DNA from: Amphiscolops sp. MND2022
Lineage: Eukaryota
Direction: 5' to 3'
Length of the DNA: 64,000 nt
Assembly (NCBI GenBank): GCA_964187785.1
Contig: OZ076416.1
Span: forward strand, 29,140,001 to 29,204,000
Shown: in pieces, positions 16,901 to 37,384 of the stretch
Numbering within the stretch: position 1 is the stretch's first letter
Layout of the letters: every line of letters starts with the position of its first letter
Made by a program: the position numbers and the translations under genes
Notes under the pieces: model-generated
Seen by the model: the letters and a program-made list of their open reading frames with translations, nothing else
Databases searched by the model: none
What the model was told of the DNA's origin: nothing

Positions 16901-18171
16901 CGGAAAGGACCGTATACAAGCCAATAACGACAAACCCGAAGATGAGTTGAACCTACATACCGACAGCGAAATTCATACTGGTGAAGCTAAAAGTTTTAAA
17001 AAAACAATAACCGAAAATACCCAGAAGGTCAAACCGGGAAAGTAGACAAATGAATAGATACGAGGGGTACCATATTCAAAAATGTTTTTGACATAATAAA
17101 GATGGTCTTTGAAACTTTCAAGATTTAACCTGGAAGCCTACCGAGACCATAGGACTTTGAAACAGAGAGCAAAGCGCACTGGCATGCTCATCGAAAGCAT
17201 AGAAGGAAACTTCCCCAAAAAGGGCTAGTGTTATAATACGGATTCCGATTTATTCGTTTCAAAAGCTGCAATCAACCTGATCTTAAAATGAGCAGTAGTG
17301 ATTGGATTTTATGTTGATACATATTTACACGTTTACATACAATATGTATCGTAGAACAACTTTATACAGAATCATTGGTACTTGTTTTTGCTATAACGAT
17401 CAGTTGGTGAATTGAAGATTTTAGAAATACAATATATTTTTATAAGCAAGCCAAAATAGAACAGTGGATTTTTTCTCGAAAACGATCGGTTTGGTTTTCG
17501 TGTAGTTAAAATCAGCACTGTTCAACATCACCCAACCTATTAGCCAAATTATTCCTCTAAGGCCTGAGTTGAGATTTTGAAGCAAAGCTATATTATTAAG
17601 CATTAGAAAGTGCCTTTCATTTTCGAACGCTTTTTCAGATTTTCAACGGTCCTCATTGGGGTAATTCTTGGCTGTGTTAGATTGATAGAAGTTCCTCAAT
17701 AAATGTCCTAGGGCATAATAAAAGACTTGGACCGTTCCTGGCTTGTTTAAACTTTCAATGGTCAGTATAATTGACAAATTATCTTCAAAACCTTCCGGCG
17801 AGTTTGATGATTAATTTGAAACAAATATCATCCTTTAGGAGTTATCATTGCCTGGCCGGTTACCTAAGAACTTTCTTTTCGTTTTTTGCTTGAAACTGGA
17901 ACACCAAAATAGCTGCCAAAGTTTCAATTTGTTTAATCATTTCCCAAGTTGGTCACTTTTCAAGTCTGATATATGACTTTTTTCAATTTGCTCACATCTG
18001 CATGATGCATACTAGAGAAATTATATCGCTTGCGAATGCTTCTGAAATGAAAAAATAACAAAAAGGACATCAGATGCAAATTTGTCTTTCTTCAATTACA
18101 AGCCTTCGCGAAAGAACATTGTTATGATGTATCGATGGATTGTAAATTATTTATCAACGTTTGAATCAGCA

Positions 18172-18501
18172 ATGGCTGCTTATGTTCATCAGAAAACCTG
18201 TTTCACTACATTACTAATATCGGGATGGTATATTTTCTCAACGATTAATGTTTTCTACAGTACTGTTATATTTTTGTCCGAAGATCACCAAATTGAAGTA
18301 TTACTTGTTACAATGCTTTTTTGTCAGTACCTTTTGGGTGGTATCCCACTAATTTGCTCCTCAATATTGACCCATCCCTCTTCGGGGGAGAAATCTGCTG
18401 TGGAGTTCAACCAAGCTGACGTCATATCCGGTTTCTTCTACCTTATCGGCAATTTGAGTGCCTCAATGTCCTTAGCGTACACTTCTGTTTCTGTCAACCA
18501 G
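18172..18501 (+). CDS. Exon 1 of TPT/SLC35E-pyruvyltransferase fusion gene (N-terminal transporter half)
   Basis: LLISGWYIFSTINVF, TMLFCQYLLG and GFFYLIGNLSASMSLAYTSVSVNQ match TPT-family TM1-TM4 motifs. Joined in phase 0 to ILKALEPVF at 25911 it gives the family VSVSxxxxxKALEP motif. Start ATG is 18172 (GCAATGG); 18124 and 18127 are in-frame alternatives. The donor is CAG|GGATGT (non-canonical). Confidence 0.8.
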
Positions 18502-19382
18502 GGATGTTGCATTCGTTTCTCATACAAATCACAGCATTGGTAGCTAGTGAAATAAAGTTCTCCCCATTGGAAGGCCTTTTTACATGTAAATTGCTATTCG
18601 TTATTGGAACTAAAAGTGATTCACTCAATCTAACTTTACAATCTTCGAAGAGTTTAAAGATGCTTCTGAGATCCTTGAAGACTAAGTTGAGAGAAACTTC
18701 TGAAAACTACCGATTTCAACGTCTTGTTGTTTCCGCAAAAACTGAGAACAAAAAGTTTTCGTGATGGATAATGTTCAAACTTGCCTGGGTTTGCAATCAA
18801 TTGAATTCCATTGGTGCCCCAATAATTCTCGTGCATTTAGGGCACAAGAGCACTTTTTCAATCTCAAGGAAAACAAGATTACGCTCCGATCAGATACATT
18901 TTTCAATATTCTTTATCCTTCAAAATTGTATCTTTATTTACGCAACAGTCTCAGAAAATCGATTCCCATTCTACCGAAATCAATTTACTCCTTTCAAGGC
19001 CAGGGATTTAAATTAATTAGAAAATCCGACGGTCGTTTCTGTTTTTAAGGATGCAAATTCGACAGCCGCTGTTCAATTTATCTAGTTCTTAGAGCGTTAG
19101 TTTCGGAAAACTTAAGGTCTTCGGTTTTACTGCAGAGTTTATGCCATGATGCTCATTCAGTTTGAATAAATAGATTTCGGCTCTATCGTGGTCCGTCCGT
19201 TTTTTTAATGGTACATCGATGTCGCATATAAGAAATTCGTTGTAACGTTTTTAGTCGGCGCTTTTCTAAGGAAAAGTGCCCGACTCTTACAGTGACTAGT
19301 TTTTTTTCTTTCTTTTTTTTCGTTAGACTACAATCTCACTCTGATTGGGCCACTTTTCTTACAATCGAAACTACTAAAACTA

Positions 19383-19756
19383 CTAGCATAAGAGGCCAAG
19401 TCCGGTCAGTGGAAATTAGTGCAAAAGGGTCCCCCCTTTCATTTTTTACTTTTTTACCGTAGCCTACAAAACCGGACGAGACTAAAGGTTCCCCCCTTTC
19501 AATTTCGGCATTGTGCGACTTTTTTTTTCAAAAATATTTTAATGTATCAAAAGAGTCCCCCTTTCGAGTTTTTTGATATTTTGCAACAGAATATACGTTG
19601 ATAAAGCCCGGAGGGTCCCCCCTTTTACATTTTTCGGCACTATGCGACATTTTCTGAAAGAAAAAAAATTCAAAAATTTCAAGTTTTTTTCAAAAAACTC
19701 TTTTGCGCTTTTTGAGCCTTAGATATAGCGCCGACTTTAGACGTTCCCGTCTTGTT
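19383..19756 (-). mobile_element. Intronic non-autonomous element (Helentron/Helitron-like candidate)
   Basis: 5' AACAAGACGGGAACGTCTAAAGTCGGCGCTATATCTAAGGCTCAAA, four (A/G)AAGGGGG(A)ACC subrepeats, and a 3' weak hairpin followed by CTAG. Confidence 0.55.
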
Positions 19757-20272
19757 GACATTAAGAGGAGGAAAACGTTTTCCCATGCAATAGTTTCTTT
19801 TCAAATTTCTACATACATCTCATCCGCGTCCTTCCTCAATGTCAGCAAATAGAGAACCAGTGGAAACTTTGGGCTTGGAAAACTTGGAGAACAAAAAAAT
19901 TTACCTACCTGTTATAGGGTTTCTTTATACCCAGTAACTTGTATTTCTTTTTAGATTACAAAGGAGAGAGCAGAGCAAGAATCTATTCATTAACTAGACC
20001 ATGTGGTGAAATGGTTCACCGTTTCTTTTGGTGGTCTACGATTTTGCTGGTACTATTGACAATGTTGATAAATATATGAATAGACAACAACAGTTTGGAT
20101 ATTTGAACATACTATGATTGACAGTTATATATATGTTTCAATTAAAGTTTCTTTTAGTCTTTTTTGTCAACCCTGTCACACTTCTCCTTCTTTGCTTTCT
20201 TGGCCATCTCTGTTCGGGTATATGTTAACACAAAAATTTAGGGTTGTAGTTCGTTAGGTGTTGTTTGTAGTT

Positions 20273-21760
20273 TTATCGTAGACTGTCCTCGCTTGACGAG
20301 AGGTTGATGATTTCGGGTTTGTCCATTGTTGTGGGTTTTTCTATATCGCAGATCATTACGGTGTCTCCGTAATTTTGTGGTGCTCTTCTACTTCTTTGGG
20401 ATCTTCTTTCTCCCGTCGATGTACTCGGTTCATTGTCAGTGTCGGTGTTTTGTTCTTCATTTGTTTCTGTGGGTTCTATTTGTGTAGTCCCCCAGTTTAC
20501 CGTGGCTTTTATGGCATTTGGAGTATTTTTATGTTTTTGTATTGTCTTCTCTTCATCCTCCGATTCAAAGAAAATTTCTTGCCAGTTAGCGAGTCTTTTG
20601 AATTCCGTTGGAATTTTCTTATTTTGCTTTTTCTTCGGTGAAGTTGGGGAGTTGCATTTCTTTGGTCGCGCATTTCTACTTGGTTCATCAATGTTGGCGT
20701 CTTGTGATTGGTTGTTGGTTTGTGCTGTTTGGTATAGATTGGCCAATTTGTGTGAAGTAACCACTTCACGCTTACTCAATAGTGTTGGCAGTGATTTGCC
20801 TCTTTCTTTTATTTTGAGCGTGTGTGGTGTTTCGTTGATGATTCGGCCTTTCTTCTTCTTGTATGTTGCCTCCAGTTTTGAACCTCTGGCACGTTCTCTC
20901 ACCAGAATTTCTGAGTCCTGGTCTGCCGGAAAGTCGCTCATCTCCAGTTCGAAGTTGCTGTCTTTGTCTGAAACATTGTAGTTCGGTTGTGGTTTAGTAG
21001 TTATTATGTCTTTGACAGTAGTAAATTTTCGATTTTCATGTAGTTCCGCTGGTGACAATTTATTTTCTTTGGGGGCAGTTCGCAGTGCGTATAGTAGTTC
21101 GGATAATCCGGTGTTTTCTTTATCCAGTACTATTGTTTTATTTGCCCTTAATCGTTCGTTTATAGTGCGGATTAATCTTTCTACTTTGCCGTTGCCCCTG
21201 TGATCGTAGATTGGATAGATAATGTGTTGAATAAAATATTTACGACAAAAGTTTTGAAATTTTTCGCTTTTAAATGCTGTTCCCGGGTCTGTACGAATTC
21301 GTCGTGGGTTTCCGTTATTTGCTATATAGTTAGTTAAAAATTCTATTACTTTGGAGGTGGTGGGGGCGCGGAGAAATTTTGCGTCAGGCCAACCTGATTT
21401 ACTATCTACCGAGACTATGAGATATTTCTTTGAGCTACGTGCGATTTTGAACGGCCCCGCTAAGTCGATTGCTATTTCTTCATTTATTGTTATTGGGGTT
21501 GGGAGTTTACCGAATTGTTTTTGTTTTAAAAGAGTTAATCGACTTACCCGGATTTTGACATTCAGAGCACGACTTTGTAAGAAGTGTGATATCTCGGTGG
21601 ATACGTGGCCACCAGATATCCGAAATATGGCGTAACATTTGATCGCGGCCAGGGTGTCCCCAGTGTAATGAATTTTTGATCGGGGTTTGTAAGACTTTTG
21701 GGATTATAAGACGAGCATCTAAGTATAAGAGATCGTTTTCATCTAGTGAAAGGGAAGTAA
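20273..21760 (-). pseudogene. Element A integrase with C-terminal tail, one frameshift near 21530
   Basis: HHCC (LHWGHPG...SCSEC) lies in one frame. The DDE core (IAIDLAGPF, RTDPGTAF, NGKVERL) lies in the next frame and continues into ORF 20273-21058. Confidence 0.9.
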
Positions 21761-21817
21761 AACGTTCACGCCATGGGCTGTCGAGTGCTTTTATTTTGGC
21801 TTTTGTGGGATTCTTGA

Positions 21818-22650
21818 TTAGATTGATGATTTTTTGTAAATTTTCATCATCTTGTAATTGGCGATTAGTAAATTTTCACCGATTTTATTGGCAATTGGTA
21901 ATTTTGATTCAAAATTTTGGGAAATTGAATAACCTGCAATCGTATTGATTGAGTTTGTTTGTCCCATTTTGTTGTCGTTGTTGAATTGCAGTGTATTGCG
22001 TGCTTTGAATGAATCACGAATGCTTTCACTTTTACTGCGTTCATCGCCACGTCTCAACTTGATCCAATGGCGGCCTCTGATTGGTCCGTTGAATTCTTCA
22101 GCTAAAATGCTATTTACATTATTTACATGATTCACTGTGAACCAGTTGTTCCACAATTCTTCTGTACCTTCTATTGGAGATGGGTGTCTTGACAAGTAAT
22201 TTGCAATTCCGATCGTTCTGCCTGGAGCATGGAAGATTTCAAAATCGAAAGGAAGTAGACGATCAACCCATCTTGTGAGTCGGCTTGAGTATGTTTTGTT
22301 ACCTTTGTTACTTTTTAAAACGGTGGCTAGTGCTTTGTGGTCAGATACGACTTGGAATTTTATCCCGTATAGATAGTTTTTGAAATGCTCGACTGCCCAG
22401 ACAACCGCCAATAACTCAAGTTCATTAATTGAGTATTTTTCTTCTAATGGTGTGAGGAAACGTGAAGCGAAGTGGATTGGTCTCCAACCAATTTCTTCTT
22501 GCTGTTGTAGTACAGCACCTAAACCTGCTTTACTGGCGTCGCAAATAATTCTTATTTTTCCGCTTTTCTTGAAGTGACCTACTTCTGTAAGTTTCTTGAC
22601 TTGTTTATTTATTTCTTCGAAAGCTTTGTCATGACTTTCGGTCCAACATC
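21818..22650 (-). pseudogene. Element A RNase H
   Basis: DASK...LAVVWAVEHFKNYLYG...SDHKAL...RLTRWVDRL motifs. Confidence 0.9.
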
Positions 22651-23914
22651 ATGCTTTGTCCTGTTTCAACAATGGGCGTAATTTAAAGCATAGTTGTGCC
22701 AAATTGGGTATGAACCTGTTTAGTTGGTTCACTGCGCCCAAATACGACCTTAGTTCCTTTAAATTTTTTGGTTGAAGCTTGTCAGTTATCGCTTGAATTT
22801 TTGTGTTGATTGGCTTTATTCCTGTTTGTGTTAGGTGGTACCCTAACCATTCTATTTCGCTTTGTGCGAATTTACATTTCTCCCATTTTAGCCGTATGTT
22901 CGCTTTATCTAGTTTTTCTAGTACTTGTTTTACTCTTGCGTAATGGTCTGTTTCGCTTCCTTTTGTTACTATTAGTATGTCATCCAAAAAGACATACGTA
23001 TTTGCAATGTTGGATAATTTTTTATCCATAACTTTCTGGAACTCGGTAGGCATCACTGTGAGTCCATAGAATCCAGTGATGAAGCGATATGTTCCCGTTG
23101 CTTTGCCGCCTATTATTTGGAAATTGCAGTGGCGTGCCGTTTCCTCATCTAATGGTATTTGGCCATAGGCATATCGCATATCTAACAAAGTGTACCACGC
23201 TTGTCCGCTTTTGTTATTATCTAGTTGTTCTGCTACCATGTCTACAAGATGTTCTAAATTCGGCATTTGGTATTTGTCTTTAATTAATTCATTGTTTAGC
23301 GCGCGTGCGTCTAGTGCGACTTTTACACTTTTGTCTCGCTTTACTGTTATTACAACCGGTTGGATAAATTGTTTATCTGTTATATCTGTTACTCGTTCAA
23401 TATGTCCTTCATTCAATAGTCTTTCAATTCCTTCTTGGACCGCGTCTTGTAATTGGATAGGTACTCGTCTACCTTTCTGTTGCGTTATTTTGGCTTCTGG
23501 TTTGAATTCAATTTTTACAGTATCATCACGAATTTGTCCTTGTCTCGTGAACAAAGAGGAAAATTGGTTTTGTAGTTTAATCTTTTCGTTATTGTTATCA
23601 TTATCGTTCCAAGTTTTTGGTTTAGTTTGTTCACTTGGTTGCGTTGTTTTATTTGGTTGTTTAATATTTTGTTTAATTGTGTAAATAGCTTTGTTACCTT
23701 CGTCTTTTGTTGGAGATACGACTTTGTAGTTGAATGCATTCAACCAATCACGTCCAATTAGTGACTTCGCGCCTTTGTCTGCAATCAGTATTCGGGCTTT
23801 GTTTAGTTTGCTATCACCCACTTCTAGATGACAGAATATGTAGCCCAATAGTTGTAGCTTCCGTTTGTTGAAGTCCACATATTCCTCATCTTCTGGTAGT
23901 TCTCTGATGAACAA
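22649..23914 (-). CDS. Element A protease C-terminus and reverse transcriptase
   Basis: LIGRDWL, LDARALN, YAYGQIPL, YGLTVMPTEFQ, FLDD catalytic motif. Confidence 0.93.
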   Translation of the reverse strand: MFIRELPEDEEYVDFNKRKLQLLGYIFCHLEVGDSKLNKARILIADKGAKSLIGRDWLNAFNYKVVSPTKDEGNKAIYTIKQNIKQPNKTTQPSEQTKPKTWNDNDNNNEKIKLQNQFSSLFTRQGQIRDDTVKIEFKPEAKITQQKGRRVPIQLQDAVQEGIERLLNEGHIERVTDITDKQFIQPVVITVKRDKSVKVALDARALNNELIKDKYQMPNLEHLVDMVAEQLDNNKSGQAWYTLLDMRYAYGQIPLDEETARHCNFQIIGGKATGTYRFITGFYGLTVMPTEFQKVMDKKLSNIANTYVFLDDILIVTKGSETDHYARVKQVLEKLDKANIRLKWEKCKFAQSEIEWLGYHLTQTGIKPINTKIQAITDKLQPKNLKELRSYLGAVNQLNRFIPNLAQLCFKLRPLLKQDKA

Positions 23915-25010
23915 TGTTTTGCGCTTCTTTTTTTTATTTCATCAATAGCAAATATTGTCACGGGTGATCCAGAGTCTACCATTGTTTGAAATGGATTTCC
24001 ATTTATTTTTCTTTTCATGGTGAATTGTCCTTTGTTATCACCCTCGATCGTGAGTACTACCTTCTCGTTATCCACAATTGAATCTTCGCTGCTTTCACTC
24101 CACTCATCAATACGTTGAACACTTTGAGGAGGTTTTGCTACTTTGCGGTTTTTCGCAAATGTTCCGGCTCCTCTAGTTTGGCAACATCGGGCAAAATGTC
24201 CTTTCTTTCCGCATTTCATGCAAGTGACGCCCAAAGCTTTACACTCTTTTAAATGTTGTGGTGTAAATACTCCTTCACATCTGAAGCACTTTTTGGTGGG
24301 TCCCCATCGTTCATTGGTTTGGTTAATGTTATTCACGTCAGTTATTTCAGTTTTTATGTTTGGCTTATCTAACGTGCCAAATGATTGTTGTCTCAATGTG
24401 CCTTCCTCGTACGCAACGGCAAATTGAATTGTTTCAGCCGCTGTTGGCTTTGGTTCTGTGCACAGTTTTTGTTGAACTTCTTGATTTATCATGTTCACAG
24501 TGAAAACATCTTTCACTAAACTATCTGTTATTGTGCCAAAGTTGCACTTTGCGGCTAATCCATTTAGTTCGTTCCAGAAGTTCTTCAATGATTCGCCTTC
24601 TTTTTGTTTTCGGGATAGAAATTTGAAACGATCAAGAGTTTCATTTTTCGGCTTCTCGAAGCAGTCTTTGCAGTTCTTTAGCAGATCGGGAAGTGATATG
24701 GTTGGTATGTTGGTGGTGGGAAACTTGTCGGCGATTGATTTGCGTCCTGTTGATCCCAGTGCAAGGTAAAGTATACTGATAGCCTTCTTGGTAGCTGGTA
24801 CTTCGTCGAGATCTCCCATTAAACTTTTTTTTTATCTCCCGTTTTCATCAGTTCTGCGATTGATATGTTGTTTTTGGCCATTAATGCCACTTCGAATATA
24901 TCTCGCCATTTTTCCCATTCTAATGTAGGGTTTTTGGAGGCATCTTGCCAATAAGTTGGAAGTCCTGCTAATGCCTGGGTTCCCGTAGAAAGTTCGGCTC
25001 GCAGCGCCAT
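23824..25010 (-). pseudogene. Element A gag with CCHC knuckle and protease active site, frameshifted at poly-A runs
   Basis: MALRAEL...WEKW start, CMKCGKKGHFARCC knuckle, MVDSGSPVT protease motif. The breaks at ~24825 and ~23930 fall in A-runs. Confidence 0.9.
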
Positions 25011-25910
25011 GTTATAGGGTTTCTTTATACTCAGTAACTTGTATTTCATTTTAGATTACAAAGGAGAGAGCAGAGCAAGAATCTATTCAATAACTAGACC
25101 ATGTGGTGAAATGGTTCACCGTTTCTTTTGGTGGTCTACGATTTTGCTGGTACTATTGACAATGTTGATAAATATATAAATAGACAACAACAGTTTGGAT
25201 AATTGAACATACTATGATTGACAGTTGTATATATGTTTCAATTAAAGTTTCTTTTAGTCTTTTTTGTCAACCCTGTCACACTACCTCTGACAATATTTCG
25301 GACAAGAAAAAAATGTGGAATGCGTAGCAAAGGCTCTTGCGAAGTTTATAGCTGCAGTTTTTGGACTTCGAAGGTCCGTTTTTCCAAACCTATTGTAAGT
25401 AGCGGTATAGTCTTCCTGTAGAACATTCGGCACGACTCTCAGTTACACTTTTTATTTTGTTTCCAATAGAAGCTCTGGTGTGACGTCAACACACATTTTC
25501 AAGGTAAATACGTTCAGGTCTCTCTTGAACAAATGTATCACGTCTAGGCAACCTTTCTCATGGTCCACTAGGTGTAAGTTTTATGGCTTTAAGCGTTTGT
25601 TTGGCCAAAACATTGGGGTTTTCAAAAAATTTTGTCGGAGCATACGTAGTAATTTGCTCAGATAAAAAGTCCAAAACTGAAATTTCTCCAAATCAGGATT
25701 TTAACACCAAAATCACAGGGTAAAAACTTCCACATCAGGATTTTATTCTGTTCCTATGAAAAAAAAATTTGAAAGAAAGTTAGTTTGACATCTTGATACA
25801 GCGCATATCACGCAGATTAAAAAAATTTGTGCTACTTTGTATATATTGTATAAAAAATATTAAACTTTTCTTATTGCAAAAAAATGAGCAACATTCTTGT
25901 TGTGAACCAG

Positions 25911-26695
25911 ATTCTGAAAGCGTTAGAGCCGGTCTTCTCTGCTGGATTGTCGGCTGTCATCTTCCACACTTATCTCTCCAGCCACCAAGTTCTCTACATG
26001 ATGCTCGCAGTCTCTGGTGCCTGTCTTGCTGCCTTCAAAGACCTGCAATTTAATTGGTTCGCATTCTCCATGGCATTTCTATCCAACGTCTCTTTCGCCA
26101 CTAGAAACGTCTTTCTCAAACTATCTCCTCAAAACCAACAGTCATCACCATTGGAGCAACAGGGCAAAATATCCATATGCGCTGCCGTTTTTCTTATTCC
26201 CCATTGGTCAGTTCTATGCATGTCGAGAACCAATGAAATTGCAGAGATCTTATACGACTTAAGCATACTCAAAAACATTATCGTAGTGGCTATCTCGCAT
26301 ACAATATACAACTTTTGTTCAATCACAGTTCTATCAGATGTCGAAAATGTGGTTCAACACGCGCTCCTTAACATCATGAAACGACCTTTCGTCATTTGTG
26401 CCACGTATCTCATTGATCGACAGAATGCTGTTCTAACATTCAGCAAATGTTTGGGATTATTATTCCTTGTTGTTGGTCAAGTATTGTTCAAACTGAATTA
26501 TAAGTTTGGTTACTCACACTATATTAAAAATCCCAGCATTTTGGTTCCAAAAATAGCCTACATCTTGATAGCTATCATTCTGTTTCATTACTCAACGACT
26601 TTGGGAGACTTTGCAATGAACCAAGTCGTTTTAGGAACCAAGTCGACCAAAACTCCAATCGCAAAATCTTTCCTCAAGAATTCCCATGAAGACAA
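25911..26695 (+). CDS. Exon 2 of fusion gene: C-terminal TPT/SLC35E half plus extra hydrophobic segment
   Basis: ILKALEPVF, FNWFAFSMAFLSNVSFATRNVFLK, YNFCS...HALLNIMKRPFVI are TPT motifs. Acceptor AACCAG| at 25910; donor AA|GTTAGT at 26696 (phase 2). Confidence 0.88.
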
Positions 26696-26869
26696 GTTAG
26701 TGCATTTTTGAATTGGTTCTTTCGGGTAAGATTTGTGTGCGTTCGTTCCGAATCAAACGTATCTTACTCCAGATTCTTTTCACCCACATTTCAAATATTC
26801 GGAAACGTTTCACCTAAAATAACAAAGTAGCAACTATTAGGCGACCCGGAAAAACACGGTTTCACGGTT

Positions 26870-28680
26870 TACTTGATGACCCAAAAAACGGAACGTACAA
26901 AAAGTTTTGAGCTCTCAAAGTGTCAAATATTTGTCAACAAACGTTTCAAAGCAACGTTTAACGCTTCTGTCAATCATTCAATTTTGGTACATTTCTCAGA
27001 AGCGAAAATACTTTCACACATTGAGAGTGAGAACGAAATAACTGGTAGACTGAAGTATTTTCGATGGTTGGAGATGTGATTACGTAATATAAGCTTCAAT
27101 CAAAATAATTGATAGATAGAAATATTGGAAAGATTCTCCGTGAGGCGACATTTGTTATCAAGCGACATTTGTTATCATTTTTTTAAAAAGCGGCATTTGT
27201 TATCAAATTGAAAAAGCGACATTTGTTATCAAATCTAAAAAGGCGACATTTGTTATCATGAGTTCAATAAGCTGAAAACACGTGTCAGATTTTGTCGGAA
27301 TTATTATTATAACGTAGTCAGCAATGTTCACATACCCCTAGTGCCCTAATTGCAGGAGCGAAGCGAAGCGGAGCGACGTGCCATCTGGCATGCCTCAATA
27401 TTGCTACTTGGCGAAGGAGCCAAGTGACCGAGCCATACAACAAATATAAAGGAGACAACAGATATAGTAGACATATTTCGATAAAAAAAATGTCGCCTTT
27501 TTAGGTTTGATAACAAATTTCGCTTTTTCAATTTGATAAAAAATGTCGCTTTTTCAAAAATGATAACAAATGTCGTTTGATAACAAATGTCGCTTGATAA
27601 CAAATGTCGCTATACCAGATTCTCAGTGCTTTGTTTACAAACAATACAATTTTGAAGACGCAAAAAATTTCTGCATTCCGTTTTTTGGTTCACCTAGTAT
27701 ATTTCAACTCAAATTCAGAACCAACAATGAGTGAACAAAACATCGAAATGCGTCTCAAAACGTAGTGTGAGTCTGAACCGAGCTGTCAATCAAACGCATT
27801 TAGATCTAAGAACCAAACGCGATCTGAAACTGCTTGTGATTGAAAAATATTTTTTACTACTAGGTGAACCAAAAAACGGAACGCATAAAAATTTTTTACA
27901 GCAAAAACGTATTAATTGTAAACAAGACACTGAGAACCTTTCACTTTCTCTGTCAATCATTCTCTCACTACGTAATCAAATTTTCAACAAAGAATGATCC
28001 AAACTTTCAGAAGAGGTCTAGACATCTGTACCAGTCATTTCGTTCACACTTCTGATGAGTGAAAGTTGTTTGGCTTCGAAGAAAAGATGTCAGATTGAAT
28101 GACTGACAAGCTGAGCTCCAATGTACAGAGTTGTTTTGAAACTTTTCGTTGACAAATATTTGACATTCTGAGAGAACATAGAAATTTTGTGCGTTTTATT
28201 TTGGTTCACCTAGCAGGTCATACAAAAAACGGAACATATTAAAAATTTCGAGCTCTCAAAATATTTGTCAGCAAGTGTTTCACAACAATTTTGAACGATG
28301 CCATTTGAATTGTCAATTGTTCAAAATGACAATTTTCACACATCAAAGTGAGAACGGAATGACAGACAAAGCTGTGTAAATTTTTTCCTGAAAATTCAAA
28401 CCGTTCTTAGTTGATGCTGTGATTGCGTAATAAGAGATCCATTTGAAAATATTGACAAAAATTGAACTTTCTGTTCCTCGTTTATTAATGTTACAACTTT
28501 GAAAAGTAAGATTTTGTGCATTTCTTTTTTTTTGGTTCACGCAGAAAACTCGATGTACCGAATCTGTGTGATTTTGTCTTCGAAACTGACGTTGTTCTGA
28601 ATGGTAGACAAGTGACAAAGTGAAATTAAGAGAACTTCTGATCTCTTGTTGACAAATGTTTGCGTCATCAATTTTAGACT
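26870..28680. repeat. Array of ~100-140 bp units in alternating orientation (core CTAGGTGAACCAAAAAACGGAAC) in intron 2
   Basis: Copies at ~26875(+), 27625(-), 27858(+), 28085(-), 28215(+), 28500(-). Perfect 24-bp inverted repeat at 27676-27699 / 27858-27881. Confidence 0.75.
27145..27610. mobile_element. Foldback-type MITE with modular inverted arms
   Basis: Five copies of GCGACATTTGTTATCA on the left and six inverted copies on the right, around a ~220-bp core containing GAGCGAAGCGAAGCGGAGCG. Confidence 0.75.
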
Positions 28681-29157
28681 ATAATTTCTAGAGCCTGATT
28701 ATCTCAGTTTTGATTTGATTGACAAGTTTTCACGTACTGAAGTACAGAGCTTTGAAAAAAGTTCATTCCAGCGTTCGTTTACAAACACTGGCTATTTAAA
28801 AAACGCAAAACAAAATTCTTTCCCAGTCTGAATATTGGGTCAAATTATACTGACCCGTAAAATTAATCAGATTCCGTCACATTCAAACTTTTTTGTCGAT
28901 TCATATCATGAATACAAAAAGTTGAAATGCAAATTGTCTGTACCGTCGCTAAGATGGGAAATATTTGTTCACTGTTTTCCTGTGATCTTAAAAAGCGTTC
29001 CATACGCCATGATTTTCATGTCCTCTGGTTTTCCGTCTCTCATAATTTTGCATAATTTTCATGTTTTTCATGTTTTATCGTTTTTATTTTGAGAGGAACA
29101 CAGTTATACAATTTTGAGCAAAATTTTAACTTAGACAGATACTGTTTTGTGTTTCAG

Positions 29158-30206
29158 TAATACATTTTGGAAAGCTGATGTTTTGAATGCGAGTGTTGCA
29201 AGACCTTATGCAGTGAACTACTTGCGAGTTCGATACAGAATTCATTCCGAGAAACTTGATAGCATGCTTCCTTCAATGCAATCGTGCAAGCAAGGACTTG
29301 AAGAAAAAACGAATCTCAAACTAGTGCTTCTTACCTGCAAGGTGCTTCTTCTTCAAAATATCTCTGACCCTGAACTTCAACTTTTCAAATCACTATTTGC
29401 TGTAAATTTCCCAACATTTGTTGAGAATAGTCAGTTGAAGTTCGTCCTATTTCATTTGCTGATGAACCGCATTGTTCGTTACACCTTTGACAAAAAAGAT
29501 TTCAAACTTTTGGGTACAAGTTTGATTGATAAGAACTCAGTTCGCATGTTTTACTGGTACAATCCGCAGGACAAATTCATGAATTGGGGAGATATTTTGG
29601 GCCCTGTGATTGTGGAGAAATTGTCTCACCTTAAAGTTGTTCATACCACCAAAAAAGTACAAAATGTGTCACTTCTCTATGGAGTTGGAAGTATATTGAC
29701 CCAGGCTATGGAAGACAGGCGACCTTATGTAACCTGGGGGCCGGGGTTAATAAAAGCACCGACAGATGTTGAACTTATGGGTGCTATCAATCGAAGCAGC
29801 ATTCAATTCCAAAACGGGAAGAGGACTGCAGAGTGTCCAAAACTGCTGAGTGTCAGAGGACCTGAATCGCAAGTGGCTATGCTCGCTATGCGGGGTACTT
29901 TTGCCCAGATATCTAAAGACCCAGGACTCCTGATTTCACATATCTTTCCAGCACGGCATTTTCCAAAGCCCAAGGAAGCAGAAGTTTGCCTGATTCCTCA
30001 CTATGTTGACAAACAAATGGTGGTTAAGGTGCTAAAAGCGAATAAAACGAGCAGCAGCAAGAAGATAAAACTCATATCGGTTTCGACAATGGAAACTAAC
30101 TACAACCGCTTTGCAGAACAAGTTGCACGTGAAATTATTTCATGCCGGCGTGTTTTGTCATCCAGCTTACACGGGCTGATTGCGAGTCATGCTTATAGGA
30201 TCCCAG
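29158..30206 (+). CDS. Exon 3 of fusion gene: stem region plus polysaccharide pyruvyltransferase (ExoV-like) domain
   Basis: NWGDILGP, GVGSIL, WGPG, VRGP, DPGLL, IPHY and SSSLHGLIASHAYRIP motifs. Acceptor TGTTTCAG| at 29157 is phase-compatible with 26695 (AA+T=Asn). The donor is CAG|GCAAGC. Confidence 0.88.
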
Positions 30207-30645
30207 GCAAGCATGCTCAAAATACAATTGTTGCACCATGTTCAACACAATCAGAAATTTCAGTTTTTAAATAAATACAATAAATACACTCCGAGAGTTA
30301 AAAAAGAGAGTCAAATTGGAATTTTGATAAAAAATTGAAGAAACGGTAGATTCTCATCCTTTAATGAAACTAGAAAAATTCAATGAAAATCTTGTAAATC
30401 GATGAATTTTCTCTCGATATAAAGGAAATGTTCGTAAAAAAAATCAGCTCGTTTGCTGGCGAGAGTTCTACGTCTCGAGTTTTAAGTCTTCGATTCGCGT
30501 GAAGAATATCGACAATAAATACTATTTCCATTCACACCAATTCGAACACATTGAGAATATTCAAAATCAAAAAATCAGCAAAATCAAAATTTTTAAAATG
30601 TCAATTCAATTCTAACTTTTCCATATTGGGAATGCTTGTCTTCAG

Positions 30646-30899
30646 GTGCAGTGATTTCTCTTTCCAGTAAAATTGCAGGGGGCAACTTCAAATACCGCGA
30701 CTATTACGAATCTCTGGGGTTATACATGCACAGAGACATCATACGTCACAATTTGACAAATTTGACACGATTGAATGACGTCACATTTTTGAGTAGAATA
30801 GTTGACAACACCCCACAACCAAAATTCCCAATTAACATCGCTTCCATTATCAACACATATCCATTCAATTTACACAATTCCATGAACTACCTTCTGTAA
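30646..30899 (+). CDS. Exon 4 (last) of fusion gene: pyruvyltransferase C-terminus
   Basis: GAVISLSSKIAGGNFKYRDYYESLG matches the ExoV-type ..SDK..GG.FKF.DYY motif with correct spacing. Acceptor TCTTCAG| is preceded by a CTAAC branch-like site at ~30612. The four exons total 2418 nt = 805 aa + stop. Confidence 0.85.
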
Positions 30900-35356: not shown

Positions 35357-37384
35357 CTAATTATAAAAATTGTCTGTATTGTCTTCATTCCCCCTCTCAC
35401 TATTGGCTACTGTTCGGCCAATGGGGTGCTGTTTTTCTACTGTATTGCGGTGACTCCTCCAATGGTCCAGTTGTTTATGGACGGATAACTGATCCTCGCT
35501 TTCGTGGTTGTCACGGTGATTGTTTGCCTGTGATGTCAATCTGTTATCCGTTGTTCGGTTTAGTTGGGGCTGTTCGTCTCCCTCTCCATTTGGTTCGGTA
35601 CTTCTGAATTTAACCTTTCGACTGTGTTTCCTGTAATCATGACATATTGGATTATTATATCGAATAATGGGGTTGGTTTTTGTTAGTCTTTTTGATCTGC
35701 ATATTGTTTTTTCTTCGCCGTGTTTAATATCTGCCTCTAATTCGGTGCTAGAACTCAGATTGCTGGCCATGTCTAATTCTGAATTTTCAAAGTTGTTCCC
35801 TTCCCCCGTTTTAGGGAAGGAAGTAAGATTTTCAAACACCTTACCGTTATCATCCCTGATACAAAGCTCATCGTTCGCTTGTCTAGCGTCCTCAATAGCA
35901 CGGTCGATCTCCGTGTCTGTCATGTTGGCGGTGGTAATGGTGGGTGTGGTGAGTGGACCGGTACTGCTCGTTCCTCCCGGTGGGGATTGGTGGGGACTTG
36001 AGTTCTGTCGGTCTCTTGTCAGCTTCAATGGTCTGCCTCGTCCGTATGTGCTCCTTTTTACCGTCGCGTTGTCTGACTGGTCCAGAGCGGTAGGGCTGTT
36101 GTTCTCTACTGGTGAGGTCTCGGGCTCGATGTCTGATTCGATCACGTATGCCCTCTTCTGTTTTGATATTGATCTTGTAAACCGGCCGTCCGGTCCCCTC
36201 GGTCCAGTTCCTCTGTTGTTGTTGCAGTCCTGATTAAAATCATAGATAGGTTTAGTAATACATTTCTTGTGTATTACTCTACCGTTGGGCGTTGTTACGG
36301 TGTGGCTTGTTTCCGAAATAGCTATATTCAGTTTGTTGCTATAAACTCTTTCGGATTTAGATTTTTGGTGTTTTTTTTCTAAGAAATGGAAAGGTTGGTT
36401 ACTAACTCCTTTATCGTTTTTTCTTGTCTTCATCGGTAGCTGGTCGGACACACCGCCAACTCCGCTGAATGAGTATACCAGTAAGGTATCGGGTTTCGCT
36501 AAAATAGAAGCTTTTGTTAGGTTTTTTAGGTTTAGTAAGTTAGTTATTTCCGTATTTGGTTTTCGGCCGTAATGTAGTTCGAATGCTGATTTCTTCAATT
36601 TCGTGTAGGGTGTTTTTCTCATGACGTCTAACGAAAGGTCTAAGGCCTTTCCGAGCCGTTCGCTTGCCTTAATATTCGTTAAAAGGTTTTCTTTTAGTGT
36701 TTTGACTCCCCGTTCTACTAAGCCTGTGGGAGTGTGGATATACGGTGTTCCGTATATCAATTTGATGTAATGTTTTTCGAAGAAGTCTCGAAAAAGACGA
36801 CCCGTGAACGCGGTTGCCTTATCTGTTCTAATTGTCTTCGGTATACCGTTCAGCTGAATATATTGTTCGAGAAATTTTACCGCCGTTTCTCCGTCAGTGT
36901 ATTTGCAGAAACTGGCTGAAGGCCATTTGCTATACCAGTCAATGGACAGTAAGATATAGAATCGGCGATGGTTATCTGTGATTGGTCCGATGAAATCCAG
37001 TTGGATTTCTTCGTTCGGACTATTCACCGGGGATAGGTTATTTTTTTCCGTGCTGGGTATATAAGGTTTATTACTCTTACCAGACATTTTGCAGGGGATG
37101 CAAGTTTCACACTTCTTTTTGATTGCATCGGACATCTTTGGCCACCAGAAGTGTCGGGCTGCTAGGGTCATCTTGTTGATGGCTGGATGTCCCTTGTGTA
37201 GGCTGATTACTGTGGTTCGCAGGTTCTTGGGGACGATGATTCTGTCTTCCATGAAGACAAGACCGAACCGGCTTGACAGCTTCCTTCTATGCAATTGGTA
37301 TTCGTCTGGTATCATCTCATGCTGTTGTCTTTCGAGGCACACCAGAGTTTTTAGCAAATTTGGATCGTTCGTAGTCTCGTTCAT
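35357..37384 (-). CDS. Element B integrase with long C-terminal extension
   Basis: HKGHP...CETCIPC zinc motif, QLDFIGP, TDKATAF, GLVERGV. The ORF is 675 aa and its stop lies inside the 3' LTR. Confidence 0.93.
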   Translation of the reverse strand: MNETTNDPNLLKTLVCLERQQHEMIPDEYQLHRRKLSSRFGLVFMEDRIIVPKNLRTTVISLHKGHPAINKMTLAARHFWWPKMSDAIKKKCETCIPCKMSGKSNKPYIPSTEKNNLSPVNSPNEEIQLDFIGPITDNHRRFYILLSIDWYSKWPSASFCKYTDGETAVKFLEQYIQLNGIPKTIRTDKATAFTGRLFRDFFEKHYIKLIYGTPYIHTPTGLVERGVKTLKENLLTNIKASERLGKALDLSLDVMRKTPYTKLKKSAFELHYGRKPNTEITNLLNLKNLTKASILAKPDTLLVYSFSGVGGVSDQLPMKTRKNDKGVSNQPFHFLEKKHQKSKSERVYSNKLNIAISETSHTVTTPNGRVIHKKCITKPIYDFNQDCNNNRGTGPRGPDGRFTRSISKQKRAYVIESDIEPETSPVENNSPTALDQSDNATVKRSTYGRGRPLKLTRDRQNSSPHQSPPGGTSSTGPLTTPTITTANMTDTEIDRAIEDARQANDELCIRDDNGKVFENLTSFPKTGEGNNFENSELDMASNLSSSTELEADIKHGEEKTICRSKRLTKTNPIIRYNNPICHDYRKHSRKVKFRSTEPNGEGDEQPQLNRTTDNRLTSQANNHRDNHESEDQLSVHKQLDHWRSHRNTVEKQHPIGRTVANSERGNEDNTDNFYN

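What the first reader, a model, noticed from the sequence alone, without database searches (positions are those of the whole stretch)
18172..30899. Single gene fusing a TPT/SLC35E-family transporter to an ExoV-like pyruvyltransferase: candidate self-supplying glycan-pyruvylation machine in an animal
Seen in sequence: four exons split by a 5.4-kb retrotransposon and repeats splice in frame (330+785+1049+254 nt = 805 aa), giving a complete TPT-family transporter followed by a PS_pyruv_trans-type domain. Established: pyruvyltransferases use PEP. In S. pombe, Golgi pyruvylation by Pvg1 depends on TPT-family PEP transporters (Pet1/2). Pyruvylated glycans are typical of bacteria, algae and fission yeast and rare in animals (sponge aggregation factor). 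Inference: this gene imports PEP into the Golgi and transfers it to glycans within one polypeptide, implying pyruvylated (anionic, sialic-acid-mimicking) glycans in this organism.
Basis: partly seen in the sequence, partly recalled or inferred. Interest (0 to 1): 0.9.

Follow-up and report, generated by a model that had tools for sequence, protein, structure and literature searches.

The report
Transporter–pyruvyltransferase fusion gene in an animal
This animal gene most likely encodes one membrane protein that joins a phosphate-translocator-type transporter to a sugar-pyruvylating enzyme, making it a good but untested candidate for how some animals add pyruvate to their glycans.

Summary
Four + strand exons (18172-18501, 25911-26695, 29158-30206, 30646-30899) join in frame to 805 aa. 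Exon 2 is a TPT-family transporter and exons 3-4 an ExoV/PssM-like ketal pyruvyltransferase (PvT). A 5.4-kb LTR element lies in intron 1.

No RNA run exists for this organism, so the fusion rests on comparison:
- Four more loci in the same genome have the same TPT-then-PvT exon series. In three loci the best donor and best acceptor at the domain junction share phase 2.
- An acoel (Convolutriloba macropyga) RefSeq model of 816 aa has the same architecture and aligns end to end.
- A diatom transcript and a mostly molluscan ESM Atlas cluster of 60 proteins also carry both domains.

An eleventh transmembrane helix follows the 10-helix transporter core, which should place the enzyme on the lumenal side. 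All family-invariant PvT residues are kept, and so are the four phosphate-binding transporter residues. The closest Swiss-Prot folds are Arabidopsis PPT2 and S. pombe Golgi PEP transporter Pet2.

PEP transport and pyruvyl transfer remain inferred. The position that is Asn in plant PPT is Phe here.

The scan noted a similar fusion on another piece of this genome (s1-184707).

Verdict: a real, probably functional fusion family, unnamed in databases and absent from the literature I could search. It is a new variant of a known kind.

The parts
18172..18501 (+). Exon 1: N-terminus and TM1-TM3 of the transporter. The start codon is uncertain, because in-frame ATGs also lie at 18124 and 18127.
   Evidence: It aligns to residues 33-130 of C. 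macropyga P0151 with the VS(V/L)NQ junction in register. Hydrophobic segments are listed.
18502..25910 (+). Intron 1, a non-canonical GG..AG intron. Its first 9 nt (GGATGTTGC) are complementary to GCAACATTC, 14 nt before the 3' splice site. Its 3' end repeats the end of exon 1 (GT[CG]AACCAG).
   Evidence: The CAG|GGATG donor is conserved in 4 paralogs. The intron is absent in the C6 paralog and in C. macropyga.
19910..25282 (-). LTR retrotransposon (5.37 kb) nested in intron 1, with 273-nt LTRs 98% identical.
   Evidence: LTRs. (RVT_1 in ORF 22649-23914, minus strand). (ORFs).
25911..26695 (+). Exon 2: TM4-TM10 of the TPT core, with phosphate-binding K (ILKALEP, 25911-25931), Y (SHTIYNF, 26295-26315) and KR (NIMKRP, 26370-26387). 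It also holds the extra TM11 (26535-26591) and a linker.
   Evidence: Pfam TPT 8.8e-24. PDB 5y78 alignment. Residue roles from 10.1101/169169. Motif coordinates.
26696..29157 (+). Intron 2, the transporter/enzyme junction. It is canonical (AA|GTTAGT ... TTTCAG|T), phase 2, and holds high-copy repeats.
29158..30206 (+). Exon 3: a helical N-terminal region and most of the pyruvyltransferase core, with NWGD, GSIL, WGPG, VRGP (29849-29869), IPHYVD and SSSLHG (30158-30181).
   Evidence: Pfam PF04230. All 24 family near-invariant positions that fall in this exon are kept. Motif coordinates.
30207..30645 (+). Intron 3, a GC..AG intron. Its 5' end CAAGCAT is complementary to ATGCTTG just before the 3' splice site.
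   Evidence: The GC donor is conserved in 4 paralogs; the C6 paralog has GT.
30646..30899 (+). Exon 4: C-terminal part of the enzyme, with the invariant K, D and Y (NFKYRDYY, 30684-30707) and the TAA stop.
   Evidence: It is 59% identical to P0003 residues 716-794.

Best explanation
Positions 18172-30899 hold one intact four-exon gene for a protein of about 805 aa.

Domain layout:
- The N-terminal 300 aa form a 10-helix DMT/TPT-fold transporter of the phosphate-translocator type.
- An eleventh transmembrane helix follows the core and carries the chain across the membrane once more.
- The C-terminal 470 aa, a helical region plus an ExoV/PssM-like ketal pyruvyltransferase, therefore lie on the side opposite the transporter's termini. 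That side is the Golgi/ER lumen if the core sits as other Golgi TPT/NST proteins do.

Inferred mechanism: the transporter exchanges cytosolic phosphoenolpyruvate for lumenal phosphate. The tethered enzyme uses that PEP to put a pyruvate ketal on a terminal sugar of a glycoprotein or glycolipid, and the released phosphate leaves by the exchange.

What is shown and what is inferred:
- Shown: exon structure, domain identities, conserved residues, paralogous and orthologous fusions.
- Inferred: splicing in this organism, topology, PEP as substrate, the acceptor.

The gene belongs to a family of at least five loci in this genome. Their enzyme domains have diverged far more than their transporter cores, which suggests different acceptors.
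For: In-frame join of 4 exons to 805 aa.

Domain identity:
- Pfam TPT and PS_pyruv_trans both score above their cut-offs.

Comparative evidence for the fusion:
- Every PvT paralog in the genome has a TPT exon just upstream on the same strand.
- At the domain junction the top-scoring donor and top-scoring acceptor are both phase 2 in the window, in C1 (CAG|GTGAGT, where the TGA that ends the frame lies inside the donor site) and in C8_29.08 (AA|GTTAGT, as in the window).
- C. macropyga RefSeq models XP_075251646 and XP_075251655 carry both domains. They are built from 2 exons and align over residues 9-801 of the window product.
- A second ENA assembly has the same order, 4.4 kb apart.
- A diatom transcript has TPT followed by PvT.
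- An ESM Atlas cluster of 60 proteins, commonest in Mollusca, carries PF04230 in 97% and PF03151 in 93% of members.

Topology:
- The extra TM11 is present in the window, the paralogs and C. macropyga and is predicted as helix 318-340.
- No hydrophobic segment occurs in the PvT part, so a separately started enzyme would have no anchor.

Enzyme domain:
- The PvT model has pLDDT 92.8. Its best folds are PssM (6.8e-10), ExoV (2e-8), EpsI and Pvg1.
- All 27 near-invariant family positions are kept, including the R, H and K of the kind shown to bind PEP in CsaB.

Transporter domain:
- The only PDB sequence hit is the plastid translocator GsTPT2. The equivalents of K204, Y339, K362 and R363 are kept.
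- The best Swiss-Prot folds are PPT2 and O94695, which is Pet2.

Selection:
- dN/dS is 0.39-0.43 on exon 2 against paralogs.
- The one exon-3 length variant seen in a sample contig is in frame, 21 nt.
Against: - No RNA evidence was available for this organism, and the DNA runs show no spliced form.
- Introns 1 and 3 have non-canonical donors, GG and GC.
- The TPT domain scores far below the TIGR00817 cut-off (63 against 318 bits).
- It has Phe where plant PPT has Asn, and Asn by my hand count where GsTPT2 has His185, so PEP specificity cannot be read from the pocket.
- The Arg of the R-L-H motif of Pvg1/CsaB is Ser here. The same is true of the whole bacterial-like subfamily.
- The intron at the domain junction is phase 2 here but phase 0 in C. 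macropyga, so the two junction introns cannot be equated.
- The orientation of the core in the membrane is assumed from other family members.
Confidence: 0.6

Rival explanations
1. The fusion protein is real, but the transporter moiety does not carry PEP. It may carry another phosphorylated or nucleotide-linked solute, only export phosphate, or serve mainly as a polytopic membrane anchor for the enzyme.
For: - Phe is kept at the GsTPT2 Phe263 position, which is Asn in plant PPT and is said to clash with PEP.
- His185 is replaced by Asn (my hand count from the alignment).
- The Foldseek E-values for PPT, TPT, GPT, SLC35E and SLC35D3 are all within two orders of magnitude of each other.
- The diatom fusion shows no obvious eleventh helix.
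Against: - The four phosphate-binding residues, including the KR pair, are kept in all family members and in the diatom.
- PvTs use PEP, and S. pombe needs TPT-family Pet1/Pet2 for the same reaction.
- The same two domains are joined in at least three distant lineages. That argues for a functional link rather than a mere anchor.
Confidence: 0.2
2. These are two adjacent but separately expressed genes: a transporter that ends at TGA 26709-26711 and a pyruvyltransferase that starts inside exon 3. They would be kept in tandem because they work together.
For: - No RNA data were available.
- ORF callers on related assemblies report the two parts as separate proteins (P0175 and P0005; P0001 starts at an internal Met).
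- The linker is poorly conserved.
Against: - Those calls come from intron-blind ORF finding.
- The best donor and best acceptor are phase-compatible in three diverged paralogs.
- The RefSeq model in C. macropyga joins the two parts across a 6.7-kb intron.
- A stand-alone PvT would lack any signal or anchor.
- The Atlas cluster members carry both domains in one protein.
Confidence: 0.12
3. The window copy is a decaying duplicate that is not spliced or not expressed, while other paralogs carry the function.
For: - The GG donor of intron 1.
- A 7.4-kb intron 1 invaded by a young LTR element.
- One paralogous locus (C8 28.99-29.02 Mb) has stops and lacks a matching first PvT exon.
Against: - All four exons are open.
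- All 27 invariant PvT positions and the transporter phosphate site are intact.
- dN/dS is below 0.5.
- The GG and GC donors are shared by paralogs that are otherwise intact.
- Other notes on this genome report that GG donors recur elsewhere in it.
Confidence: 0.08

Closest known systems
S. pombe Golgi pyruvylation system: Pvg1p pyruvyltransferase plus PEP transporters Pet1p/Pet2p
   Same: It has the same two activities: a TPT-family transporter and a PF04230 ketal pyruvyltransferase that uses PEP in the Golgi lumen. Pet2 (O94695) is the second-best Swiss-Prot fold match of the transporter domain. Pvg1 is a significant fold match of the enzyme domain.
   Different: In yeast these are separate genes, and Pvg1 has its own type II anchor. 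Here they are one polypeptide joined by an eleventh TM helix. Identity is low (about 12% to Pvg1, 18% to Pet2). The enzyme belongs to the ExoV/PssM-like branch, with SSSLHG in place of the R-L-H motif.
Rhizobial ExoV / PssM exopolysaccharide ketal pyruvyltransferases
   Same: These are the best fold matches (PssM 6.8e-10, ExoV 2e-8). They share the motif set NFGD, GSIL, WGSG, VRGP, IPHYVD, SSSLHG and K..DY with about 1500 bacterial-like homologues.
   Different: The bacterial enzymes are stand-alone proteins of about 260-320 aa. They are cytoplasmic and act on lipid-linked repeat units (from my own knowledge). The animal domain has an extra N-terminal helical region of about 120 aa and is tethered to a transporter.
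Plastidic phosphate translocators (PPT, TPT, GPT; structure GsTPT2, PDB 5Y78/5Y79) and SLC35E proteins
   Same: They share the 10-TM DMT fold and the phosphate-binding Lys, Tyr and Lys-Arg. PPT2 is the top fold hit, and SLC35E1/E2/E4 are in the same list.
   Different: Identity is only about 18-22%, and the score is far below the TIGR00817 cut-off. Phe stands at the PPT Asn position. There is an extra eleventh helix and a fused enzyme.
C. macropyga LOC142344055 (XP_075251646 / XP_075251655), the diatom MMETSP1070 transcript, and a mostly molluscan ESM Atlas cluster
   Same: All have the same TPT-then-PvT architecture.
   Different: All are unnamed or 'uncharacterized'. The acoel protein is 38% identical to the window product. 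The diatom PvT domain does not group with the acoel clade. The molluscan proteins could not be fetched for comparison.

Membership tests
PS_pyruv_trans (PF04230) ketal pyruvyltransferases | Profile match above the curated threshold | tested here: met
   Exon 3 scores 29.9 bits against a cut-off of 25.3, E 6.9e-7. HMMER finds 1523 homologues at E<=0.001.
PS_pyruv_trans (PF04230) ketal pyruvyltransferases | Two-domain alpha/beta (GT-B-like) fold shared with Pvg1, ExoV and PssM | tested here: met
   This was tested on the C. macropyga homologue, using an alignment that includes the window exons. The model has pLDDT 92.8. Fold matches are PssM, ExoV, EpsI and Pvg1 and 5ax7 at probability 0.97.
PS_pyruv_trans (PF04230) ketal pyruvyltransferases | PEP-binding Arg, His and Lys (CsaB R148, H308, K328 / Pvg1 R217, H339, K361) | tested here: inconclusive
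   The family-invariant R (VRGP), H (SSSLHG) and K (K..DY, in exon 4) are all kept in the window. Their equivalence to the CsaB and Pvg1 numbers is read from motifs, not from a residue-level superposition. The second Arg (CsaB R306) is Ser here, as in the whole subfamily.
PS_pyruv_trans (PF04230) ketal pyruvyltransferases | Transfer of pyruvate from PEP to a sugar acceptor | not testable with these tools
   This needs an enzyme assay.
TPT family (PF03151) / plastidic-type phosphate translocators | Profile match and 10-TM DMT fold | tested here: met
   PF03151 scores 84.8 bits against a cut-off of 30. The model has 10 core helices. PDB hit 5y78 has E 1.6e-10.
TPT family (PF03151) / plastidic-type phosphate translocators | Phosphate-binding Lys204, Tyr339, Lys362 and Arg363 (GsTPT2 numbering) | tested here: met
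   K in ILKALEP, Y in SHTIYNF and KR in NIMKRP align to these residues (roles). They are conserved across the family and in the diatom.
PEP/phosphate translocator (PPT) subtype | Asn in place of Phe263, widening the pocket for PEP; membership in TIGR00817 | tested here: not met
   The window has Phe (SNVSFATRN) at that position. TIGR00817 scores 63 bits against a cut-off of 318. So the domain is not a PPT orthologue; whether it works like one stays open.
Golgi PEP transporters Pet1/Pet2 (S. pombe) | Close similarity to Pet1/Pet2, and PEP import into the Golgi | tested here: inconclusive
   Pet2 is the second-best fold hit (7.8e-11, 18% identity), but it is not separated from PPT, TPT or SLC35E hits. 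Transport and localisation cannot be tested here.
Single fused gene (one mRNA) | Transcript spanning the 26695/29158 junction | not testable with these tools
   No RNA run was found for this organism. Support is comparative only.

The most novel reading that the evidence does not exclude
TPT-pyruvyltransferase fusions are the so far unidentified animal glycan pyruvyltransferases. Under this reading they form a self-supplying Golgi module present in acoels and molluscs. It would account for pyruvylated galactose in Aplysia glycolipids and would give acoels a pyruvate-based anionic glycocalyx. The five paralogs here, with conserved transporter cores and diverged enzyme domains, would pyruvylate different acceptors.
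Probability: 0.4. Interest if true: 0.75.

Novelty: new variant of a known kind. Interest (0 to 1): 0.62.

Why it matters
Pyruvate ketals on animal glycans have been known for decades, in Aplysia glycolipids and sponge glyconectins. The reviews I could read name no animal enzyme for them.

A fusion of the donor transporter with the transferase is a strong 'Rosetta stone' link. It proposes that PEP is imported into the secretory pathway of animals, names candidate genes and makes the question testable by expression and glycomics. It also gives an orphan branch of the SLC35E/TPT family a candidate substrate.

The gene also shows this genome's unusual introns: conserved GG and GC donors closed by terminal stems.

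Tried and rejected
- RNA evidence: two run searches, on the window gene and on the C6 paralog, found only four DNA runs of one sample. Laying them showed contigs that cross exon-intron borders and no 26695/29158 joint.
- Sequence search of the PDB with exon 3, and with a 63-sequence family profile, found no pyruvyltransferase. Only fold search did.
- NCBIfam gives no family for the PvT part.
- The word-based homologue search of the transporter part found only unnamed close relatives, so the transporter could not be placed in a named-sequence tree.
- A full-length alignment for folding (A2) was poor and was not used.
- The window genome is not C. macropyga, since the best identity is 39-45%.
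- A TE insertion directly into an exon was considered for the exon 1/2 break and rejected. The LTR element lies well inside the intron, and the intron with its GG donor is shared by four paralogs.
- A shared origin of the diatom and acoel fusions is not supported by the PvT tree, but the diatom branch is too long to decide.
- Fold searches of the ESM Atlas added only generic PvT and DMT clusters.
Full report
**1. Observation**

Joined, they give an open frame of 805 codons ending in TAA.

Pfam scores exon 2 as TPT (PF03151, E 8.8e-24). It scores exon 3 as PS_pyruv_trans (PF04230, E 6.9e-7, just above the curated cut-off).

Intron 1 holds a 5.37-kb LTR retrotransposon on the opposite strand. 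Its 273-nt LTRs are 98% identical and it carries an RVT_1 ORF. Intron 2 holds very high-copy repeats.

Only intron 2 has canonical GT-AG ends (AA|GTTAGT ... TTTCAG|T). Intron 1 begins with GG and intron 3 with GC. In-frame ATGs lie 45-48 nt upstream of the proposed start, so the N-terminus is uncertain.

**2. Is it one gene?**

No RNA run is available for this organism. The four runs that hold the locus are genomic. Their contigs cross the exon-intron borders and none shows a spliced joint. The case is therefore comparative, and it is strong.

(a) Paralogs in the same genome. The genome is 1.07 Gb and the window lies on a 64.6-Mb contig.
- Every copy of the PvT domain has a TPT exon just upstream on the same strand. 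The other loci are at C1 89.5 Mb, C6 50.2 Mb, C8 29.08 Mb and C8 28.99-29.02 Mb.
- tblastn with the 805-aa product recovers the full exon series, in order, at three of them. The C8 28.99-29.02 Mb locus has stops and lacks a match for the first PvT exon.

(b) The domain junction.
- The best-scoring donor at the end of the transporter frame and the best-scoring acceptor at the start of the enzyme frame are both phase 2. This holds in the window, in C1 and in C8_29.08.
- In C1 the donor is a perfect CAG|GTGAGT, and the TGA that ends the frame lies inside that donor site.
- C8_29.08 has the same AA|GTTAGT donor as the window.
- These copies share only 43-65% amino-acid identity, so the compatible frame has been maintained.

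(c) Other organisms.
- HMMER against 1.84 billion representatives found P0003, 798 aa, matching exon 3 at residues 389-715.
- P0003 is XP_075251655, isoform X2 of 'uncharacterized protein LOC142344055' of the acoel Convolutriloba macropyga. Isoform X1 has 816 aa.
- Both domains are present in both isoforms. The gene has two exons split by a 6.7-kb GT-AG intron between the domains.
- The window product aligns to it in a single HSP (residues 9-801 to 33-813, 38% identity, E 3.7e-168). The exon 1/2 junction (VSVNQ|ILKALEP against VSLNQVIKCLEP) is exactly in register.
- A further ENA assembly has a TPT ORF followed 4.4 kb downstream by a PvT ORF.
- A transcript of the diatom Minutocellus polymorphus (MMETSP1070) also has TPT followed by PvT.
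- An ESM Atlas cluster of 60 eukaryotic proteins, commonest in Mollusca, carries PF04230 in 97% and PF03151 in 93% of its members.

The window genome itself is not C. macropyga, since the best identity is 39-45%. It is probably another acoel or a relative, but I could not name it.

**3. The non-canonical introns are not defects**

- The CAG|GGATG donor of intron 1 is shared by four paralogs. The CAG|GCAAG donor of intron 3 is also shared by four.
- In both introns the first 8-10 nt pair with a block 7-14 nt before the 3' splice site. The arms differ between paralogs yet stay complementary.
  - Intron 1: GGATGTTGC/GCAACATTC in the window, GGATGCCA/TGGCATCC in C1.
  - Intron 3: CAAGCAT/ATGCTTG in the window, CAAGGAT/ATCCTTG in C8_29.08.
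- Intron 1 also ends with a copy of the last 9-14 nt of exon 1. It is absent from the C6 paralog and from C. macropyga. That is what a transposon-derived intron would look like.
- Earlier notes of this scan report GG donors and terminal stems elsewhere in this genome.

**4. Anatomy of the protein**

- Hydropathy and an AlphaFold model of the acoel N-terminal 400 residues give ten core helices plus an eleventh. This helix is at 318-340 in the acoel protein and 319-337 in the window (SILVPKIAYILIAIILFHY, 26535-26591).
- An eleventh hydrophobic segment is present in all paralogs and relatives.
- A 10-helix DMT core has both termini on one side, so the eleventh helix should put the C-terminal 470 residues on the other side.
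- That part has no further hydrophobic segment. It carries 8 of the protein's 10 N-X-S/T sequons.

**5. The enzyme domain**

- The PvT part of the acoel protein was folded with an alignment that includes the window exons. The model has pLDDT 92.8.
- Its best Swiss-Prot fold matches are the rhizobial ketal pyruvyltransferases PssM (6.8e-10) and ExoV (2e-8). EpsI, YxaB, AmsJ and S. pombe Pvg1 follow. Pvg1 (5ax7) also matches in the PDB at probability 0.97.
- The catalytic core is residues 120-399 of that part. About 120 helical residues precede it.
- All 27 positions that are at least 90% conserved in a 63-sequence family alignment are kept in the window, 24 in exon 3 and 3 in exon 4.
- They include the R of VRGP, the H of SSSLHG and the K of K..DY. 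These match the kind of residues shown by mutagenesis to bind PEP in CsaB (R148, H308, K328). The equivalence is read from motifs, not from a superposition.
- Exon 4 is thus needed for the active site.

**6. The transporter domain**

- The only PDB sequence match is the plastid triose-phosphate/phosphate translocator GsTPT2 (5y78, E 1.6e-10).
- Using that alignment and the published roles (10.1101/169169), the four phosphate-binding residues are all present: Lys204, Tyr339, Lys362 and Arg363.
- The Phe263 position stays Phe; it is Asn in plant PPT, where the change makes room for PEP. His185 is Asn by my hand count.
- The best Swiss-Prot fold matches are Arabidopsis PEP/phosphate translocator 2 (4.2e-11) and O94695 (7.8e-11). 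A published table names O94695 as the Golgi PEP transporter Pet2. Other plastid translocators and SLC35E1/E2/E4 follow closely, so the ranking does not settle the substrate.
- TIGR00817 matches far below its cut-off.

**7. Mechanism**

- Pyruvyltransferases use PEP. In S. pombe the Golgi enzyme Pvg1 depends on the TPT-family PEP transporters Pet1 and Pet2.
- Joining the two activities in one chain, with an extra helix that places the enzyme across the membrane from the transporter's termini, is most simply read as a self-supplying module. PEP enters in exchange for phosphate, and the enzyme releases phosphate as it forms the ketal.
- This reading is inference. Splicing here, topology, PEP specificity and the acceptor are all untested.
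- dN/dS is 0.39-0.43 on exon 2 against paralogs. The one exon-3 length variant seen in a contig of the sample is an in-frame 21-nt deletion. Both point to a working gene.

**8. Rivals**

- The transporter part may carry another solute or only anchor the enzyme. I give this 0.2, on the Phe263 point and the weak discrimination among fold hits.
- Two separately expressed neighbours: 0.12. Only intron-blind ORF calls support this.
- A decaying copy: 0.08. The intact residues speak against it.

**9. Novelty**

- Reviews of pyruvylated glycans list the mollusc Aplysia and sponges as the animal cases and name no animal enzyme.
- Full-text searches found no paper on a TPT-PvT fusion.
- The architecture is already present, unnamed, in public protein sets: an acoel RefSeq model, a molluscan cluster and a diatom transcript.
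- The PvT tree puts the acoel-type domains in one clade with 100/100 support on a long stem. The diatom lies elsewhere on a long branch. The origin of the fusion is open.
- I rate this a new variant of a known kind, the Pvg1 plus Pet1/2 system merged into one protein. It is of good but not exceptional interest.

Noticed in passing
window 18502-18510 with 25888-25896, and 30207-30216 with 30630-30639; paralogs in L023, L024/L025, L026-L028: Both non-canonical introns (GG-AG and GC-AG) have a terminal stem. It pairs the first 8-10 nt of the intron with a block 7-14 nt before the 3' splice site. The arms differ between paralogs but stay complementary, which looks like compensatory change.
   Followed up: partly
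window 18488-18501 and 25897-25910: The 3' end of intron 1 repeats the last 9-14 nt of exon 1 (GT[CG]AACCAG), next to the inverted terminal blocks. The intron is absent in the C6 paralog and in C. macropyga. This looks like an intron born from a transposon insertion with a target-site duplication.
   Followed up: partly
window 25911-26500 compared with L023 and L028: The transporter core in exon 2 is 82% identical to the C1 and C8 29.02 Mb paralogs (dS about 0.27). Exon 1 and the enzyme exons are only 43-49% identical. This suggests gene conversion of the core or a mosaic history.
   Followed up: partly
L020:1429-2619 and L026:2379-3700: Degenerate, compact partial copies lie just downstream of the last exon of two paralogs. 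Each has the transporter tail, the start of the enzyme and the end of the enzyme, with a large internal deletion.
   Followed up: no
window 29823: One contig of run X4 carries an in-frame 21-nt deletion in exon 3, in a poorly conserved loop of the enzyme. Several SNPs in exons 2-3 also differ between contigs of the same sample.
   Followed up: no
window 26844-28235: Intron 2 holds repeats with summed contig depth up to about 490,000, against about 70-90 for the flanking unique sequence. They are among the most abundant repeats of this genome.
   Followed up: no
window 35357-37384 (-): A 675-aa ORF with integrase zinc-binding and rve core domains marks a second retroelement downstream of the gene.
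   Followed up: no
P0164 (Minutocellus polymorphus MMETSP1070): A diatom transcript also joins a TPT domain to a PS_pyruv_trans domain, but shows no obvious eleventh helix. Its enzyme domain does not group with the acoel clade.
   Followed up: partly
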